From assembly GCA_033442325.1 (NCBI GenBank), contig JAWQFM010000016.1:316097-380096 (forward strand): a stretch of 64,000 bases of DNA, written 5' to 3'. This document shows, piece after piece, positions 5,204 to 15,164 of this stretch. The first letter of the stretch is position 1; each line of letters starts with the position of its first letter. The position numbers and the translations under genes were made by a program. The notes under the pieces were generated by a model. That model saw only the letters and a list, made by a program, of their open reading frames with translations, was not told the DNA's origin and searched no databases. This stretch comes from Salpingoeca rosetta (Eukaryota > Protista > Choanoflagellata).

Positions 5204-8293
<3,090 letters not shown>

Positions 8294-8921
8294 AGCGGCC
8301 AGTTCATGTGCATGTCCTTGCAAAGAGTGCGTGCTTCGCAGACCAGTTCCACCACTCCCGCGCCTACTTGCTTTCAACATGCTTGGTACCTGCCCCAAAC
8401 TCAATGCACAGCATGATGCGAGACCACCATACATGATGGAAGTTGAGAAGTGATGCGCGATAGAGCTGCCAGTGCATGGTCAGGAGAGCAGGAGGGGGAC
8501 AAGAGGCTTTGGCTTGTAGTTGTGGCGTTTTGTTTGGTTTGCTTGCATCGCGACAAATAAGAGTGCTCTTCACTCTCTTCTGTCTGGAGTTGTGCCAGTG
8601 TATCATTTTCAAACAACAACACAAAACCAGCCGGGCTCGGTCCGGGCGGGAGACGCACACACTCCCCGCCAGAGCACCCAGACGGTGCAGCGGGCGCGCG
8701 CTCAAGCCCAGCGCAACCACCAACAGGGCAAGCGCACCCGCAAGCGCAAGCATCCGCAGAACACACCCCCCGGCCACAGCGGCCAGCGCAGCAATGACAG
8801 CAACGACGGCACTGCTGCCACCGCCGCCACCGCCACCACCGACAACGATGAGGGACAGCCACACAGCGCCCCAGTGACCTCACGTAGCCCCGGTGGCCCG
8901 GCCGCAACAGAGCCCCCTGCA

Positions 8922-9034
8922 ACTGTCTAAGCGACAGTCGCAGCACTGCACATGAGCCTCGCACCGAGGCACTTGGTTTCTATCGATCTATTGATTTACT
9001 TTTCTTTTTATCTATGTGGCGCCTGCTCTCACAC
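8922..9034 (+). repeat. Dispersed 113-bp repeat, copy 1 (possible 3' end of a mobile element), preceded by an orphan low-complexity open frame ending at TAA 8928-8930
   Basis: 108/113 identical to 60260-60372. Contains hairpins ACTGTC-taagc-GACAGT and GCCTCG-cac-CGAGGC. Ends in CTCACAC. Confidence 0.85.
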
Positions 9035-9248
9035 ACACCTACACGTGCACACGCGCGCACATGCACATACGCACGCGCGCACATGCACACGCGCGCACAT
9101 GCACATACGCACGCATGCACACACACACACACACACACAAGACGTCCAAGGCACCTTACTGCCCTGCCTCGCAACCAAACACACATCCTTTTCACTTCTC
9201 GTCCTCCTCGTCCTCCTCCTCCCTTCCACCTGTCATGTCACACTGTCA

Positions 9249-12200
9249 CTACACGGTCGACACGTCCGTGTGCGGGCCGCTAAACCCGTCCATTGCGTCC
9301 CCATTCGCTTCATCCTCCAGGAGCAGCTGCTTCTGGGACGCGCGACGCTGGTGGTGGCTGGGGCGCTGCTTGGTGCAGTGGCCGTTTTCCGTCGCCGTGC
9401 CATTGCTGTGAGTACACGAGATGAGCGCCTTGGTCTCTGGCTCGCGACGCACGGGCGCAGCACCGCTGCTCGCATGCGTGCTGCTGCGCCGATGGTCCGA
9501 GGGCAGCTTCTGCTGAGCGTGGAGGCGGAACTTGCGGCGAATGCGAAGGAGCAGGATGATGGCGCCAAGAATGCGAATGCCAATGTAGAACAGCACCAGC
9601 GGCAGCACAAGCGCCCACTCAGAGGGATCGTGTGCCTCCGGTGACTGCACAAACAGGATGTTGCGCTGCCGGTAGTCCTCCGTCAGCAGGTTGGTCTCGA
9701 TGTAGCAGTCGTGCGGACCCACGGCGCTGCTCGCCCTCGACGGATGGCAGCGGTACGAGTCGTTGGCAGAGAACTCCGTGCGCATGAGCGCCGTCAGGAT
9801 GTAGTACGGGATGCCAATCACGCTCGGCAGCCACTGGATCGCGTCGGGCAGCGTGCGGTAGAACCCAGCCATCATCAGCATCGCCTGCACAACAACAGTC
9901 ACCACGGCAACGGCTGCCGCGGGGTCCGGAATCGCCGCCCCGAGCAGCAGCCCGAGTGCGTGGAACACGTTGGCCGCAAGCGCGAGGATGAAGCTCTTCG
10001 TCAGGTTGCTCTCCCAGTCAGCGCCCACGTATGCAAGCGTAAACGTGATTGTGCCAACACAATCGGCCACACCGCAGCACGCAAAGTCAACACCGTCCAC
10101 ACCACCAGCCGCAGCCAGTANNNNNNNNNNNNNNNNNNNNNNNNNNNNNNNNNNNNNNNNNNNNNNNNNNNNNNNNNNNNNNNNNNNNNNNNNNNNNNNN
10201 NNNNNNNNNNNNNNNNNNNNNNNNNNNNNNNNNNNNNNNNNNNNNNNNNNNNNNNNNNNNNNNNNNNNNNNNNNNNNNNNNNNNNNNNNNNNNNNNNNNN
10301 NNNNNNNNNNNNNNNNNNNNNNNNNNNNNNNNNNNNNNNNNNNNNNNNNNNNNNNNNNNNNNNNNNNNNNNNNNNNNNNNNNNNNNNNNNNNNNNNNNNN
10401 NNNNNNNNNNNNNNNNNNNNNNNNNNNNNNNNNNNNNNNNNNNNNNNNNNNNNNGTCAGCATCAGCCCCTCCAGCGTCTCCTCAAGGGCCTGGCTGTACT
10501 CGTCCTCCGTGGCGTTAGTCAGCAGCAGCGCCCCGCAGTAGTTGATGTTGTCCTCCACAGACAGGTCGCCGCGGATCGGGGCCACCGTCGGCAGAAACGA
10601 CAGCACCGCCGCCTTGTTCTCCTCCCGCAGCGCCTGCACGGGCACGTCGCCAACCACAATCTCCCCAGCCTCCCACACAATGCCAACCGAGTGGCCCGCC
10701 AGCGTGCGCAGCAGCACCGTCTTGCCGCTACCGCTCGCGCCCACCACCCCCGTGATGCACCCTGGCTGCGCTACGCCGCTCACGCCACGCAGCAACGGCT
10801 TGCTGCCCTTGGCCGACACCACACGCAGGTCCTTCCACCGCAGGGACACAGCCGGCGGCTCTGCCAGCGACGTGGCATGAGAGCCGGCAATGATCTCGGC
10901 ATCCTCCCTCAGCCCGGTTCCATGGCCGCTTCCGTGGCCGTGCGTGGCAGAGGCCGCTGTGTTTGCATTTGCTGGCGTCGCCAGCCGTCGCTTGCTCAGC
11001 CACCGGCACAGGAAGATGAAGCCAAAACACAGGGCGAGGATGATGACGAGCGCAATCCAGTGCGGGGTCTCGTTGCGTCGAGTGCCAAACCGCACCTGCC
11101 CAGACTGGTCCGCCTTGCCTTGCAAGGGGGGCGACACGTGCCGGCACAAGCTGTGGGCGGAGCACTTCCAGTCGCTGCGGGGCGTCTGCCCAAGCACGGC
11201 GTCGCGGTCCTCGTAGCAGTCGCACGCTGTTGCCGTGTGCGCAATGGCCGTGTTGTTGCAGCTGGGAAAGCCGGCAAAGCTGAGGTTCCTCTCAGGGATG
11301 CGGTCGACGGCCTCCAGCATCGTCCACAGCATGCCGTCGTCGCGGTGCAGCGGAATGTGGCAGTGGGCCAGCCACATGCCCGGGTTGTCTGCCTTGAAGG
11401 CAATGGCAACCCAGCCACCAGCTGGCATCACCACCGTGTCCTTGAGCGGGGCCTCCGACGGGTGCAGCAGCGACTCTGGCGACGGCATCGGCAGCTTCTC
11501 GCACGTGGTCCAGCGGCAGCCGTTCTTCCGGGGATAGCCAACGCCAACAACGTGGAACTTGTGGCCGTGCAGGTGCATTGGGTGGGTGAAGCGCGTCGAG
11601 TCCTTGTGGTGGCTCATGTACATCAGGATCGTCTGGTTGTAGTCGAAGTACATTGCGTTGATGTGCGGGTGCACGTGGTCGCCCTCCGTGCCAAACTGTA
11701 GCAAAGGTTTGCTGGATATGGCTGTCTGCGTCATGGGGTTGTCAATGCCGTGGGAAAAGTCACGAACGTGCGTAAAGTGGCCAAAGGACGGTGGAGGCAC
11801 AAAGATGAACTCGGCCTCATGTGAGAACGCGGTTGGCTTCTCCATCGCGGGGCGGCTCAACAACGGGTTCAGCGCTGTGACAGGGATGCACGTGTCAGGT
11901 GCCTGCTCTGGTGTTGCGCCCGCATCGAAGCAGTTGACCGTCTTCTGCTGCAGCCGCGGGGACGTTGTGGTGGTTGGCGAGGCGTCGGCGGGCGCGCCCG
12001 TGTAGCGCACGACGCCCAGCAGCTCGTTGGAGAACTGGGCTGGGTCCTCCGTCAGCTTGAAGCGGAGCCAGTAGTTGTCGACCGGCTGGTTGGCTTCAAG
12101 GATGACGTCGAAGCGCTCCGCCACGTGCAGCTGCACGCACTCTGCCTCGTACGGCTCGGTGTTGGAGCCATCCGCGGCAATGACGGTCAGGTTGTGGTTG

Positions 12201-13216
12201 TCGACGCAGACCGAGAACGCGTACAGTTCGCCAATGTTGAGGAGGCGAAGTCGGTACCGCTTGCCTTGCTCCACGTCGAGGACAAACCTGCGGTTGGGCT
12301 GGCCCGCCACGTGGCCCGTCCACCAGCGGAAGGTCCCCACGCTCGTGCCGTCCGGTGCATGGGAGGATGAGGGCAGCTTGCTGCCAGAGTTTTGCAGGAA
12401 GAGGGCGTATGTGGCTTCTTCAAACAGGTCACCGAACGGGAGCGTGATGTCTTCGTCATACAGCGGTGCGTGGGGATCCACCTCGTCATCTGCGGGCAAA
12501 ATGATGAAGGCGCCAATGAGGCCACGGCTTGCGACGCGGTCGATGCCCGCGTGTGTGTGATACCAGTATGTGCCCGCCTCGTCTGTGATGACAAACTCGT
12601 ACGTCATGGATTCTCCTGGTGGCACCGCGCACTGTGTTAGGCCCACCACGCCATCCATGTTGATGGCATCGCGCACCTGCATGGAGAAGGAACAAGGCGA
12701 TTGGATTGAGTGGGTGGGCGAGTGTGTGTGTGTGTGTGTGTGTGTGCGTGTGTGTGTGTGCGCGCGTGCGTGTGTGGATGGACGTGGCAAAGCCTCGCAT
12801 GCCACACAGGGGACAGGCAACAATCACGCAAGCAATCACATACACGAGATACACACACACAAAGACACGCACACGCACACACAAAGACACACACACACGC
12901 ACGCACGCACCAAGACGCACACACACACGCACAAAGGCACACACACCTCGAGACCATGCCAATGGATGGACACGCCTTCGGTGGCAAACTTGTTGTGCAG
13001 GTGCACGACAAGGCGGTCGCCGCGCTTCACGCGAAGTTCAGGGCCAGGGACGGTGCCGTTGATGCTTGAGGCGTAGATGGGGTGGTGCTCGGTCTCCACA
13101 AAAGCATACTGTGCCACGAGATCATATTCCACCACCGCCGCAACCGCGTGTCGCAGCTGCGTGCCCGCGACGACGACAAGCAGAAGCACACCAAACGACG
13201 CCACGCACCAACGCAT
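9249..13216 (-). CDS. Multicopper oxidase (laccase/ascorbate-oxidase type) - TM - ABCG-type transporter fusion, spanning an assembly gap
   Basis: Exon 1 13216-12947 (signal peptide, SIHWHG). Exon 2 from 12676 carries GTYWYHTH, HPMHLHGH, WLAHCHIPLHRDDGM, a Cys-rich linker, TM WIALVIILALCFGFIFLC, then LRWKDL...LLRGVSGVAQPG and Walker A GASGSGKT (10741-10718), all contiguous up to the gap. After the gap (10120-9249) come ABC2-type membrane helices (GLLLGAAIP, MMAGFY..LP..IQWL, YY..ALM..EF). Confidence 0.85.
10121..10454. other. Assembly gap (334 N)
   Basis: Run of N inside the ABC nucleotide-binding domain. Confidence 1.
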
Positions 13217-13617
13217 GATTCACAACGGACGGCCAAAGAATGTGCGAGATGTCGTGTGTTTTGCTGTTCTTCATGTCAAGCAGAAAAGCAAGTGATCTAT
13301 CCGCGACCTCCGTCCAGCCTGCCTCTGCATGCAGGCATAATTTTTTCAGGCATCGCTCCAACGCCACTTCCCCATATGGAGCATTTCACAATTCTTGGGT
13401 ATCAGCACTTTCACACTTCAACGTGCTGACCTGCATGAATGAGCAAATTGGTTGGATTGTGCACTGTCGACTTCGCAACCCCATACAAACATCGTTCCAA
13501 CGGAGGGGAAACAAGCAAGCACAGCAGAACGCTTCAAGGCGCGTGCATTCTCTCCCAGCTCCCCCCACTACCCCCCACTAACAACCAGACCACCACATAC
13601 CACCACCAGCCCCAGCC

Positions 13618-14678
13618 ATGTCCACGACTGCAGATGCAAAACAGCAGCAGCCGCCGCGCCGCATCGGCCATGTCCTTGAGGGCATCGACATGAAGACGCT
13701 CACGCCAGAGGGCGCGGAGAAGGTGCGGGAGGCTGTCCTCAAGTACAGCGTCGTTGTGCTTCCCAAGCAGGATTTGGAAGAAGAAGACATGGCGCGCATC
13801 GCAGAGCTGTTTGGTGCACCCGTGGATCTGCCAAGCGAGATGGCGTTTGGCCACCAAGCCAAGTCTCAGCCGCGCGTCACCGTCGTCTCCAACATGCGCC
13901 CGGATGGCACCATCATTCCAAACAACAAGGCTGCCGAGTACTGGCACCAAGACGTGAGTTTGGCAGAATCATGTTCTCCTTGCACCACCCACGCTCAAAA
14001 TGTGTTCTTGCTCTTGTTTTTCCTCCATCCACAGTGCTTCGGACATCAAACGTTGACCGCCTCCGTACATACCCACCCACTCACAAAATGCCAATTTGCT
14101 TCACTGGCTGCCTCGCACCGGTGCGATCTGCTGTTGCTGTTTACTATGCTTCACAGGGCAACTTCTGGGTTGCGCCCCGCGAGTACGTGATGAACTTCCT
14201 TTACTCTGTGATTGTGCCAGAGGAGGGCGGCGATACGGGTTTTGCCGACACGGTGCTTGCGCTGCAGCAGATGGATCCCGAGCTGCGCAAGGAGCTCGAG
14301 GGCCTGCAGATTGAGGTGGATGCCCGCAAGATCCCGGACTTCTCCAGCCTGAAGGAGGACGACGAGCGCTTCCCCGTTGCCCTTCACTCCATCATCTTCA
14401 ACCACGACGAGTCCGGCATCGAGTCGCTGTACCCTGGAAACGGCAACGTCACGATCAAGGGCAAGACCAAGGAGGAGTCGCGCGACATCATCGGCCGCGT
14501 GCTCGCCCACCTCGACAGGGAGCCGTACGTGTACTACCACAAGTGGACCAAGGGCGACCTCGTGCTGTGGGACAACAAGACGTGCATGCACCGCAGCATG
14601 GGCGGCTACGGCAACCACCCGCGCAAGCTGTTCCGCACTCAGTGCTTCCACCACCCTAACCTTCGCACGCAGTCGTGA
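13618..14678 (+). CDS. TauD/TfdA family Fe(II)/2-oxoglutarate dioxygenase
   Basis: Exons 13618-13953 and 14157-14678. WHQDGNF (HxD), VPEEGGDTGFAD, HKWTKGDLVLWDNKTCMHRS (distal His), R..FR. Confidence 0.92.
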
Positions 14679-15164
14679 ATGAATGCCTGCACAATGGCGC
14701 ATGCGTCTGTTCTTCCTTCTCCTGACGGTCTGCGTTTGATTGCATGGGCTGTGTAGTTGCATTACAGGCAGTCCTCTATATCTCTGTTTGCTTGTTTGAT
14801 GTGATGTGACATGATGTGATGTGATGTGACGCAGTGAGGTCTTGTGTCTGTGTCCGTCTGTATGTGCGTGTCCTGAGCCGCCCGACTTGACGTGCTCGCC
14901 TCAGCCGAAGCACACCCAGTAGTAAACAGCCAACAAACCCACAAATTACTTGCACAATGACAACGAAGAGAGCTCGAAGCGCCCAAAGAAGAGCAGAGCG
15001 AGCTGAGGGCAGCAAGTGCACAGGATCACAGCACAACACATTCAAATATCGTGCGGGCCGTGATTCAACTCAAAGATGACATGTCGAATGGACACACACG
15101 TGCTTCATCATAACACGCACAATCGCACCCACACCGACACAGGCACAGGCACAGGTACACGCGC

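What the first reader, a model, noticed from the sequence alone, without database searches (positions are those of the whole stretch)
9249..13216. Multicopper oxidase fused through a TM helix to an ABCG-type transporter
Seen: a single exon runs without interruption from a three-domain multicopper oxidase into a Cys-rich linker, a TM helix followed by KRR, and an ABC NBD with Walker A GASGSGKT. All four Cu motifs are intact (HWH in exon 1; WYHxH, HPxHLHGH and HCHxxxHxxxGM with axial Met in exon 2). ABC2-type helices follow the gap on the same strand. Known: yeast Adp1-type ABCG proteins have an ectodomain-TM-NBD-TMD layout, and Fet3/Ftr1 couple a multicopper oxidase to a permease as separate proteins. 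I know of no characterised single-chain oxidase-ABCG protein. Inference: an export-and-oxidise (or oxidise-and-import) machine for phenolics, pigments, urate or metal at the cell surface.
Basis: partly seen in the sequence, partly recalled or inferred. Interest (0 to 1): 0.88.

Follow-up and report, generated by a model that had tools for sequence, protein, structure and literature searches.

The report
Copper oxidase fused to ABCG transporter
A choanoflagellate gene really does join a complete outward-facing copper oxidase to an ABCG-type membrane transporter in one protein, and it belongs to an undescribed family found in several marine protists in which the transporter's ATP motor is often degraded or lost.

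Summary
The window is Salpingoeca rosetta, and the gene is the public record 'laccase 1' (XP_004993075).

**What the sequence shows**
- One uninterrupted frame, 12676-10455 (-), runs from a three-domain multicopper oxidase with all copper ligands intact.
- It continues through a four-cysteine stalk, a TM helix followed by KRR, and into an ABC ATP-binding domain (NBD) with Walker A GASGSGKT.
- The ABC-2 membrane domain follows the gap.

**The gap**
- It is not resolved here.
- A 96-99% identical inverted partial duplicate (PTSG_06175) bridges it in frame with 787 nt.
- Four 1-nt homopolymer deletions sit within 66 nt of the gap edge and look like read-end errors.
- The public 1068-aa model splices over the gap. 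The full protein is probably about 1384 aa.

**The fusion is old**
- The S. infusionum transcript (1329 aa) has the same architecture.
- About 20 further 50%-identity clusters have it too, including Skeletonema and Octactis.
- The oxidase and membrane-domain trees recover the same groups.
- The ABC half is ABCG-like by both sequence and fold.

**The twist**
- In S. rosetta the NBD lacks the Q-loop Gln, and the catalytic Glu is Asp and the H-loop His is Gly. The last two are read from the duplicate.
- Elsewhere in the family the NBD is canonical, dead or absent.

Function is inferred: translocate or extract a substrate and oxidise it outside. I obtained no S. rosetta RNA evidence and found no paper describing the fusion.

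The parts
12947..13216 (-). Exon 1 (90 codons). It carries the start codon, a hydrophobic signal-peptide-like N-terminus and the beginning of cupredoxin domain 1, with the HWH copper motif at 12964-12956.
   Evidence: Pfam Cu-oxidase_3, E 2.3e-12. Sequence and splice donor read. Motif coordinates. It matches residues 1-90 of the public protein P0001.
12677..12946 (-). The only intron seen (270 nt, GT..AG), filled with (TG)n/(CA)n microsatellite.
   Evidence: The exon junction ...HWHGLE|VRDAINM... equals that of P0001 and aligns without a gap to S. infusionum P0002.
11312..12676 (-). Rest of the three-domain multicopper oxidase ectodomain, with WYHTH, HPMHLHGH and HCHIPLHRDDGM (axial Met). It also holds two family-specific Cys pairs at 11938-11888 and 11518-11501.
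   Evidence: Pfam. PDB sequence search gives Botrytis laccase 3v9e at E 5.5e-62 and ascorbate oxidase at 3.2e-53. Ligand columns. Coordinates.
11063..11311 (-). Juxtamembrane stalk with a conserved four-cysteine motif, CxC...(14-26 residues)...C[ST]xxxLC; motif at 11260-11144.
   Evidence: The motif is conserved in all fusion members and in five stand-alone relatives. It is absent from Fet3 and plant laccase rows. The cysteines are nearly invariant in alignment A1.
10985..11062 (-). Transmembrane helix TM0 (11062-11000) followed by KRR (10993-10985). This is a positive-inside signal that places everything downstream in the cytosol.
   Evidence: Hydropathy peak of 2.63 at residues 629-647. Every family member has a helix at this position. 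Coordinates.
10455..10984 (-). Cytosolic low-complexity linker, then the first half of the ABC NBD. Walker A GASGSGKT is at 10741-10718. The Q-loop region at 10600-10556 has Thr where Gln is expected. Similarity to the paralogue begins at 10910.
   Evidence: Pfam ABC_tran. Alignment to ABCG25. Motif table. Duplication boundary.
10121..10454 (.). Assembly gap. By the paralogue it should hold about 787 nt: the signature LSQGQ, Walker B LLDD, the H-loop position (Gly), a disordered Asn/Ser-rich linker and TM1 to TM2/3 of the membrane domain.
   Evidence: L009 7554-8340 joins both flanks in frame. That stretch occurs only once in the assembly. The content of the window's own copy is inferred, not seen.
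10055..10120 (-). Low-quality contig end with four 1-nt deletions in homopolymer runs relative to the paralogue. They shift the frame.
   Evidence: Base-by-base alignment. There are no further indels in the following 800 nt or so of coding sequence.
9249..10054 (-). C-terminal half of the ABCG-type membrane domain. The invariant Gln helix is at 9896-9858. Extracellular loop 3 with two conserved Cys is at 9776-9684. The last TM helix is at 9617-9546. A cytosolic tail follows, then the stop codon at 9251-9249.
   Evidence: Pfam ABC2_membrane. It is 52-56% identical to S. infusionum. Conservation profile. The fold of the near-identical paralogue matches ABCG1/25/2.

Best explanation
**Shown.** This is one Salpingoeca rosetta gene of two exons, about 1384 codons if the gap equals the paralogue. 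It encodes a type-I membrane protein with these parts in order:
- a signal peptide;
- a complete three-domain multicopper oxidase on the outer (or lumenal) face;
- a disulfide-rich stalk;
- one TM helix;
- a cytosolic linker;
- an ABCG-type half-transporter (NBD, then a six-helix ABC-2 membrane domain).

The fusion is ancient and inherited as a unit across distant protist lineages.

**Inferred.**
- The membrane domain, presumably as a dimer like other ABCG half-transporters, brings a small reducing substrate from the cytosol or the membrane to the outer face.
- There the tethered oxidase, whose T1 site has a Met axial ligand, oxidises it while reducing O2 to water. Oxidase and translocator thus act on the same molecule.
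- In S. rosetta the NBD can probably still bind ATP, because Walker A and the Walker B Asp are kept. It is unlikely to hydrolyse ATP quickly, because the Q-loop Gln, the catalytic Glu (Asp) and the H-loop His (Gly) are missing. Transport is therefore ATP-gated, slow, dependent on a canonical ABCG partner, or pulled forward by the irreversible oxidation outside.
For: **Architecture and motifs**
- All oxidase and ABC domains lie in one frame.
- All copper ligands are intact.
- TM0 followed by KRR places the NBD in the cytosol.

**ABCG identity**
- By sequence, the best solved relatives are ABCG25, ABCG1 and ABCG2, matching both NBD and membrane domain (E 8e-19 to 2e-14).
- TIGR00955 aligns end to end.
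- By fold, the model has pLDDT 82 and pTM 0.81. All 50 best PDB matches are ABCG proteins, with TM-score (normalised by query or by target) between 0.59 and 0.76.

**The fusion is real and old**
- S. infusionum transcript ORF P0002 aligns collinearly in one HMMER stretch, 2-720 to 93-801, across the junction.
- 26 of 38 aligned relatives carry Cu-oxidase plus ABC2_membrane.
- There are also genomic examples with a single uninterrupted ORF, L010-L013.
- The oxidase domains of all fusions fall on one side of a branch with SH-aLRT 100, away from laccases, Fet3 and ascorbate oxidases.
- The membrane-domain tree recovers the same groups.

**Topology.** The oxidase sits on the side to which ABCG proteins deliver substrate (established knowledge of ABCG exporters).

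**A defined arrangement of the two domains.** The full-length model of the NBD-less homologue P0008 has pTM 0.74 over 1059 residues.
Against: - The NBD motifs are degenerate in S. rosetta. Walker B and the H-loop are read from the paralogue, not from this copy.
- The NBD is the least conserved domain between the two Salpingoeca species, at 29%. It is dead or absent in many members, which argues against a classical ATP pump.
- S. infusionum has lost five copper ligands and P0140, P0153 and P0131 are also degenerate, so oxidation is not universally kept.
- The gap and four frameshifting indels are unresolved.
- No substrate is indicated.
- The docking test gave no answer.
Confidence: 0.5

Rival explanations
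1. A surface oxidase that merely uses an ABCG-derived membrane module as anchor and dimerisation scaffold. The oxidase acts on extracellular substrates such as Fe(II), Mn(II), Cu(I), phenolics or matrix components. The ABC half no longer transports anything and its NBD is vestigial.
For: - The NBD is degenerate in S. rosetta and dead or absent in many relatives.
- The NBD is only 29% identical between two congeners.
- Stand-alone stalked oxidases exist in Bolinopsis and Prorocentrum.
Against: - The membrane domain is the most conserved part of the protein, at 56%. It keeps invariant intramembrane and loop residues across the family, including a Gln in TM5 and a Glu in EL3. That is more than an anchor needs, since TM0 alone already anchors the oxidase.
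- Five lineages keep a fully canonical NBD.
Confidence: 0.25
2. An oxidase-permease for metal uptake that works like Fet3-Ftr1. The ectodomain oxidises Fe(II) (or another metal) and hands the product to the attached membrane domain for import.
For: - The family is found in marine protists, including diatoms and a dictyochophyte.
- The oxidase-plus-permease logic is established for Fet3-Ftr1.
- Dispensability of the NBD would fit a non-ATP permease.
- An Asp aligned with Fet3 D409 is present in several members.
Against: - The oxidase clade is separate from Fet3, and Fet3 is a weaker PDB match than laccases and ascorbate oxidase.
- The same Asp column is also occupied in a plant laccase, and it is shifted by two residues in S. 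rosetta.
- No metal-binding motif is conserved in the membrane helices.
- ABCG-type domains are known as exporters or floppases, not importers (established knowledge).
Confidence: 0.1
3. The S. rosetta copy is a decaying gene. On this reading the four indels next to the gap are real, the protein is truncated within the membrane domain, and the degenerate NBD reflects loss of function.
For: - There are four frameshifting 1-nt deletions at 10120-10055.
- The NBD is degenerate.
- A recent partial duplicate nearby shows the locus is rearranging.
Against: - All four indels are in homopolymers within 66 nt of a contig end. None occurs in the other 3 kb of coding sequence.
- All 12 copper ligands and all stalk cysteines are intact.
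- The frame is open for 740 codons before the gap.
- Post-gap coding sequence differs from the paralogue at a single base while the 3' UTR has diverged.
Confidence: 0.07
4. Artefact: two separate genes (an anchored oxidase and an ABCG) joined by mis-assembly at the repeat boundary 10910 or by read-through annotation.
For: - Similarity to the paralogue starts at 10910, a place where assemblers can join wrongly.
- There is a gap inside the gene.
- I have no RNA evidence from this species.
Against: - The frame is continuous across 10910.
- The S. infusionum transcript and many other proteins align collinearly through the same junction.
- The paralogue is best explained as a copy of the fusion gene with a 3.2-kb internal deletion. 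It still keeps 60 nt of the TM0-NBD linker upstream of the NBD.
Confidence: 0.04

Closest known systems
Yeast Adp1-type half-size ABCG/PDR proteins (fungal clade V)
   Same: The layout is the same: extra N-terminal extracytosolic domain, one TM helix, NBD, then ABC-2 membrane domain. [quoted passage not shown]
   Different: The ectodomain here is a complete copper enzyme rather than EGF repeats. The NBD is degenerate. Whether the ABC half is phylogenetically related to the fungal clade was not tested.
ABCG half-transporters with solved structures (ABCG1, ABCG2, ABCG25, ABCG5/G8)
   Same: - The domain order is NBD then membrane domain.
- Pfam finds ABC2_membrane.
- These are the best sequence matches and the best fold matches.
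- Extracellular loop 3 has two conserved Cys.
   Different: - Sequence identity is only 15-20%.
- There is an extra N-terminal oxidase, stalk and TM0.
- The Q-loop Gln, catalytic Glu and H-loop His are replaced.
- I found no close stand-alone ABCG relative, although that search is limited by its word index.
Fet3p-Ftr1p ferroxidase-permease pair
   Same: A membrane-tethered three-domain multicopper oxidase with a C-terminal TM helix is physically coupled to a polytopic transport protein.
   Different: - In Fet3-Ftr1 there are two polypeptides, and the permease is not of the ABC type.
- The oxidase here belongs to another clade, has an axial Met, and carries a Cys-rich stalk that Fet3 lacks.
Laccase and ascorbate oxidase enzymes
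   Same: The fold and the four copper motifs are shared. The best PDB and NCBIfam matches are of this kind.
   Different: - NCBIfam scores are far below the equivalog cut-offs: 236 against 615 bits, and 208 against 559.
- The oxidase forms a distinct clade.
- It is membrane-bound and fused to a transporter.
Plant pairing of ABCG exporters with wall laccases in lignification (separate proteins)
   Same: The logic is the same: export a phenolic precursor with an ABCG and oxidise it outside with a laccase (reviewed in PMC3705174, listed; I did not read the paper).
   Different: In plants these are separate, unlinked proteins. Nothing here shows a phenolic substrate.

Membership tests
Three-domain multicopper oxidase | Three cupredoxin domains | tested here: met
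   Pfam Cu-oxidase_3, Cu-oxidase and Cu-oxidase_2 all score above their gathering thresholds.
Three-domain multicopper oxidase | Full set of copper ligands: HxH, HxH, HxxHxH and HCHxxxHxxxxM | tested here: met
   HWH, WYHTH, HPMHLHGH and HCHIPLHRDDGM are present, read directly and aligned to relatives.
Laccase / ascorbate oxidase / CueO equivalogs (NCBIfam) | Score above the curated equivalog cut-off | tested here: not met
   TIGR03388 scores 235.6 against a cut-off of 614.8. TIGR03389 scores 208 against 558.9. CueO scores 78.8 against 525.
Fet3-type ferroxidase | Placement with Fet3/Fio1 sequences in the oxidase tree | tested here: not met
   Fet3-like rows sit on the other side of a branch with SH-aLRT 100.
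Fet3-type ferroxidase | Acidic Fe(II)-binding residues (Fet3p E185, D283, D409; recalled from the literature) | tested here: inconclusive
   Only the D409 column was examined. Asp is present in several members but also in a plant laccase, and it is offset by two residues in S. rosetta.
ABCG subfamily | NBD N-terminal to an ABC-2 type six-helix membrane domain | tested here: met
   ABC_tran lies upstream of ABC2_membrane on one strand. The complete order is seen in the paralogue and in P0002.
ABCG subfamily | Closest solved relatives and fold are ABCG proteins | tested here: met
   By sequence, ABCG25, ABCG1 and ABCG2 lead. By fold, the top 50 Foldseek hits are all ABCG proteins. Both tests were run on the paralogue P0006, which is 99% identical where the two can be compared.
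Catalytically competent ABC ATPase | Walker A GxxGxGK[ST] | tested here: met
   GASGSGKT at 10741-10718.
Catalytically competent ABC ATPase | Q-loop Gln | tested here: not met
   Thr aligns with the Gln of ABCG25 and of the S. rosetta PDR-type NBD. This is read in the window's own sequence at 10600-10556.
Catalytically competent ABC ATPase | Catalytic Glu after the Walker B Asp, and the H-loop His | tested here: not met
   LLDD (Asp for Glu) and Gly for His. Both are read from the paralogue, because the window's own copy of these motifs lies in the gap.
Adp1-like ABCG (fungal clade V) | Extra ectodomain plus TM helix ahead of the NBD and membrane domain | tested here: met
   The clade's definition is quoted from PMC9426558.
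Adp1-like ABCG (fungal clade V) | Phylogenetic grouping with fungal ADP1; EGF-type ectodomain | not tested
The ectodomain here is an oxidase, not EGF.

The most novel reading that the evidence does not exclude
The conserved core of this family is the oxidase plus the ABCG-type membrane domain, and the ATP motor is dispensable. The membrane domain would act as a facilitator. Irreversible oxidation of the substrate at its outer mouth would supply the direction ('oxidative trapping'), an ATP-independent way of driving an ABC-fold transporter. This would explain why the NBD has degenerated or been lost repeatedly while the membrane domain stays the best conserved part.
Probability: 0.17. Interest if true: 0.9.

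Novelty: new variant of a known kind. Interest (0 to 1): 0.66.

Why it matters
- Enzyme-transporter fusions show which activities work on the same molecule. Here a copper oxidase is hard-wired to an ABCG-type translocator in organisms ranging from the closest living relatives of animals to diatoms. I found no study that describes it.
- The family offers a natural series of canonical, degenerate, dead and missing NBDs. That series can be used to ask what an ABCG membrane domain can do without ATP hydrolysis.
- S. rosetta is genetically tractable, so localisation, knockout and point-mutant tests are feasible.
- The public protein record is wrong across the gap: it lacks the signature, Walker B, the H-loop and TM1-3. 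Domain-architecture searches therefore under-report the fusion.

Tried and rejected
- **RNA reads.** No read or transcript evidence was obtained for S. rosetta.
- **Sequencing-run index.** No run on record as RNA holds the stretch. Runs holding 0.96-0.97 of the words probably include the intron, so they say nothing about expression.
- **Docking test.** Complex prediction of the ectodomain against the membrane domain of homologue P0008 gave no answer (score 0.00). This is neither support nor evidence against binding.
- **Search for a full-length S. rosetta protein** in the 5.8-billion-protein collection. Only the two public models were found.
- **Search for a gap-filling contig** in the assembly. 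Only the paralogue matched; the other hits are a low-complexity stretch.
- **ESM Atlas, by features and by shape.** No large cluster has the fused architecture.
- **Literature.** Eight searches found no description of an oxidase-ABC fusion or of this protein.
- **Ferroxidase signature** at the D409 column. It does not discriminate.
- **Gene-cluster idea.** A conserved cluster with TauD and guanine deaminase is rejected as a conserved feature. Other genomic loci of the family have unrelated neighbours.
- **Second S. rosetta oxidase** on contig C32. It has no stalk motif and no ABC half, so it is not part of this family.
Full report
**Identity of the locus.** The window is Salpingoeca rosetta, contig C16:316097-380096. 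The finding coincides with the public protein 'laccase 1' (EGD74175.1 / XP_004993075.1 / F2UC68; P0001, 1068 aa).

**Checking the observation.**
- A single stop-free frame on the minus strand (10457-12823) contains Cu-oxidase_3, Cu-oxidase, Cu-oxidase_2 and ABC_tran.
- Exon 1 (12947-13216) carries the start of Cu-oxidase_3, and 9249-10100 carries ABC2_membrane.
- The intron is 12946-12677 with GT..AG ends.
- The oxidase-to-NBD junction lies in contiguous sequence, 330 nt or more from the gap.

**The gap.** The window cannot show continuity across 10121-10454.

A partial inverted duplicate lies about 21-23 kb upstream of the window (PTSG_06175, P0006; L009 7045-9216).
- It is 98.9% identical to 10910-10455 and 96.4% identical to 10120-9047. 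The coding part after 10055 differs at one base.
- In that copy the two flanks are joined by 787 nt of open, in-frame sequence. This sequence encodes the signature LSQGQ, Walker B, the H-loop region, a disordered Asn/Ser-rich linker and the first membrane helices.
- It occurs only once in the assembly, so the second copy is presumably what is missing in the gap. The stated gap length (334) would then be an underestimate.

Directly after the gap (10120-10055) the window has four 1-nt deletions, all in homopolymer runs. I read them as read-end errors, but this needs resequencing.

The public model P0001 hides the problem with an artificial splice from '...NATED' to 'DNLTKSF...'. It therefore lacks half the NBD and about three membrane helices. 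With the paralogue's insert the protein would be about 1384 aa.

**The paralogue as evidence.**
- Its homology to the window starts at 10910, inside the cytosolic linker between TM0 and the NBD.
- It abuts a 93.5% identical copy of the 3' part of the neighbouring TauD gene (window 14099-15148), with a 3-nt overlap.
- Relative to the window it lacks 10911-14098: TM0, the stalk, the oxidase, the promoter region and TauD exon 1.
- Because the fusion is shared with other species, the paralogue is a recent copy of the fusion gene with an internal 3.2-kb deletion, not its precursor.
- It has no in-frame ATG ahead of Walker A. The annotated N-terminus is a frame-shifted reading of the same linker.

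**Is the fusion real?**
- The S. infusionum transcriptome ORF P0002 (EukProt EP00049, 'complete', 1329 aa) has Cu-oxidase x3, ABC_tran and ABC2_membrane. It aligns to the S. rosetta frame in a single HMMER stretch across the junction.
- Among the 150 best representatives of 1.8 billion proteins, about 20 further 50%-identity clusters combine the oxidase, the stalk, a TM helix and the ABC-2 domain.
- Pfam finds ABC2_membrane in 26 and ABC_tran in 6 of 38 aligned relatives.
- Named sources include Skeletonema japonicum and Octactis speculum.
- Genomic cases exist with one uninterrupted ORF. One is P0139, on compact eukaryotic contigs of up to 42.8 kb. Another is P0121, in an NCBI assembly.
- In a tree of oxidase domains, all fusion proteins and the stalk-bearing stand-alone oxidases (Bolinopsis, Prorocentrum and others) fall on one side of an SH-aLRT 100 branch. 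Laccases, Fet3/Fio1, ascorbate oxidases and plant laccases fall on the other. S. rosetta groups with S. infusionum and P0121.
- A tree of the membrane domains recovers the same groups.

I conclude that the fusion happened once, long ago, and that the two halves have been inherited together. The root was not inferred.

**What the halves are.**

*Oxidase*
- The best solved relatives are Botrytis laccase, Aspergillus McoG and ascorbate oxidase. Fet3 is a weaker match.
- NCBIfam equivalogs are far below their cut-offs.
- The family has its own marks: a four-Cys stalk motif and two extra Cys pairs.

*ABC half*
- The best solved relatives are ABCG25, ABCG1 and ABCG2, for both domains.
- TIGR00955 aligns end to end but below its cut-off.
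- An AlphaFold model of the paralogue (pLDDT 82, pTM 0.81) has only ABCG proteins among its 50 best PDB matches.
- The layout matches the Adp1-type proteins described in PMC9426558.

**The unexpected part: the ATP motor.** I aligned the NBD to ABCG25 and to a canonical S. rosetta PDR-type NBD.
- The S. rosetta NBD keeps Walker A, the Walker B Asp and an LSQGQ signature.
- It has Thr for the Q-loop Gln, seen in the window itself.
- By the paralogue, it has Asp for the catalytic Glu and Gly for the H-loop His.

Across the family the NBD takes several forms:

| NBD state | Members |
|---|---|
| Canonical | P0121, P0125, P0131, P0135, P0147 |
| Degenerate | the two Salpingoeca species |
| Dead, Walker A lysine lost | P0122, P0124, P0127, P0128, P0129 |
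| Absent | P0008, P0136, P0139, P0145, P0150 and others |

Between the two Salpingoeca species, identity by domain is:

| Domain | Identity |
|---|---|
| Membrane domain | 56% |
| Oxidase | 48% |
| Stalk + TM0 | 43% |
| NBD | 29% |

This is the reverse of the usual pattern in ABC transporters. The oxidase is not untouchable either: S. infusionum has lost five of twelve copper ligands, and P0140, P0153 and P0131 are also degenerate. S. rosetta keeps all twelve.

**Mechanism.**

*Shown*
- The topology places the oxidase on the trans side and the NBD in the cytosol.
- The membrane domain has the ABCG fold.
- The copper sites are intact.
- The NBD is weakened.
- The halves have been co-inherited for a long time.

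*Inferred*
- The membrane domain delivers or presents a small reducing substrate that the tethered oxidase oxidises.
- ATP is at most a slow or gating input in S. rosetta.

A full-length model of the NBD-less homologue P0008 has pTM 0.74. This hints at a defined arrangement of oxidase and membrane domain, but I could not inspect the coordinates, and the explicit docking test gave no answer. No substrate can be named from the data. The rivals, weighed in the Rival explanations section, are a pure anchor or scaffold role, a Fet3-Ftr1-like metal uptake system, decay of the S. rosetta copy, and an assembly artefact.

**Limits.**
- Walker B and the H-loop of this copy are unseen.
- The trees were built with the quick method and are unrooted.
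- The taxonomic range rests on a few named sequences.
- The literature search covers open-access text only.

**Verdict.** The pump-and-oxidise reading is plausible in outline but must accommodate a degenerate ATPase. I class it as a new variant of known kinds (an Adp1-like ABCG with an enzyme ectodomain; a membrane-tethered multicopper oxidase coupled to a transport protein). Interest is 0.66.

Noticed in passing
G000:C16:293045-295216 (+) = L009 7045-9216, about 21-23 kb before the window start: PTSG_06175 is an inverted partial duplicate of the fusion gene. It lacks the oxidase, stalk and TM0, and it is joined with a 3-nt overlap to a truncated copy of the neighbouring TauD gene. It has no in-frame ATG before Walker A, and its annotated N-terminus is a frame-shifted reading of the linker.
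   Followed up: partly
window 9249-13216 (public protein XP_004993075.1): The public 1068-aa gene model bridges the assembly gap with an artificial splice. It therefore lacks the ABC signature, Walker B, the H-loop and about three membrane helices, and Pfam sees no ABC2_membrane in it.
   Followed up: yes
window 13618-14675 (+): A two-exon TauD/TfdA-family dioxygenase gene is transcribed divergently from the fusion gene (Pfam E 1e-09 and 4e-31). Its 3' part is duplicated together with the ABC half in the upstream paralogous locus.
   Followed up: partly
Loci of the fusion family in other organisms have unrelated neighbours, so a conserved cluster is not supported.
   Followed up: partly
P0002 (Salpingoeca infusionum transcript ORF): The orthologue keeps the whole architecture at 43-56% identity. 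It has nonetheless lost the T1 Cys, two T1 His and two T3 His (HSQ for HCH, TQP for THP, WYHSQ for WYHTH), so its oxidase domain is almost certainly copper-dead.
   Followed up: partly
G000:C32:429293-430153 (-) (L006/L008): A second S. rosetta multicopper oxidase has an N-terminal Cys-rich repeat region and a C-terminal hydrophobic tail. It has no stalk motif and no ABC half.
   Followed up: partly
L010 10001-13414 (metagenome contig k141_2154494, 42.8 kb): An NBD-less family member (oxidase + stalk + TM + ABC-2 domain, 1137 aa) sits as one intron-free ORF in a very compact eukaryotic genome. Its neighbours are about 100 bp apart (tRNA methyltransferase, MORN, PPDK, ribosomal L11), and no NBD gene lies next to it.
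   Followed up: no
window 6000-9200 and 12700-12950: Long (CA)n/(TG)n microsatellites fill introns and untranslated regions. They create many spurious Cys/Val- or His/Thr-rich ORFs in six-frame listings.
   Followed up: no
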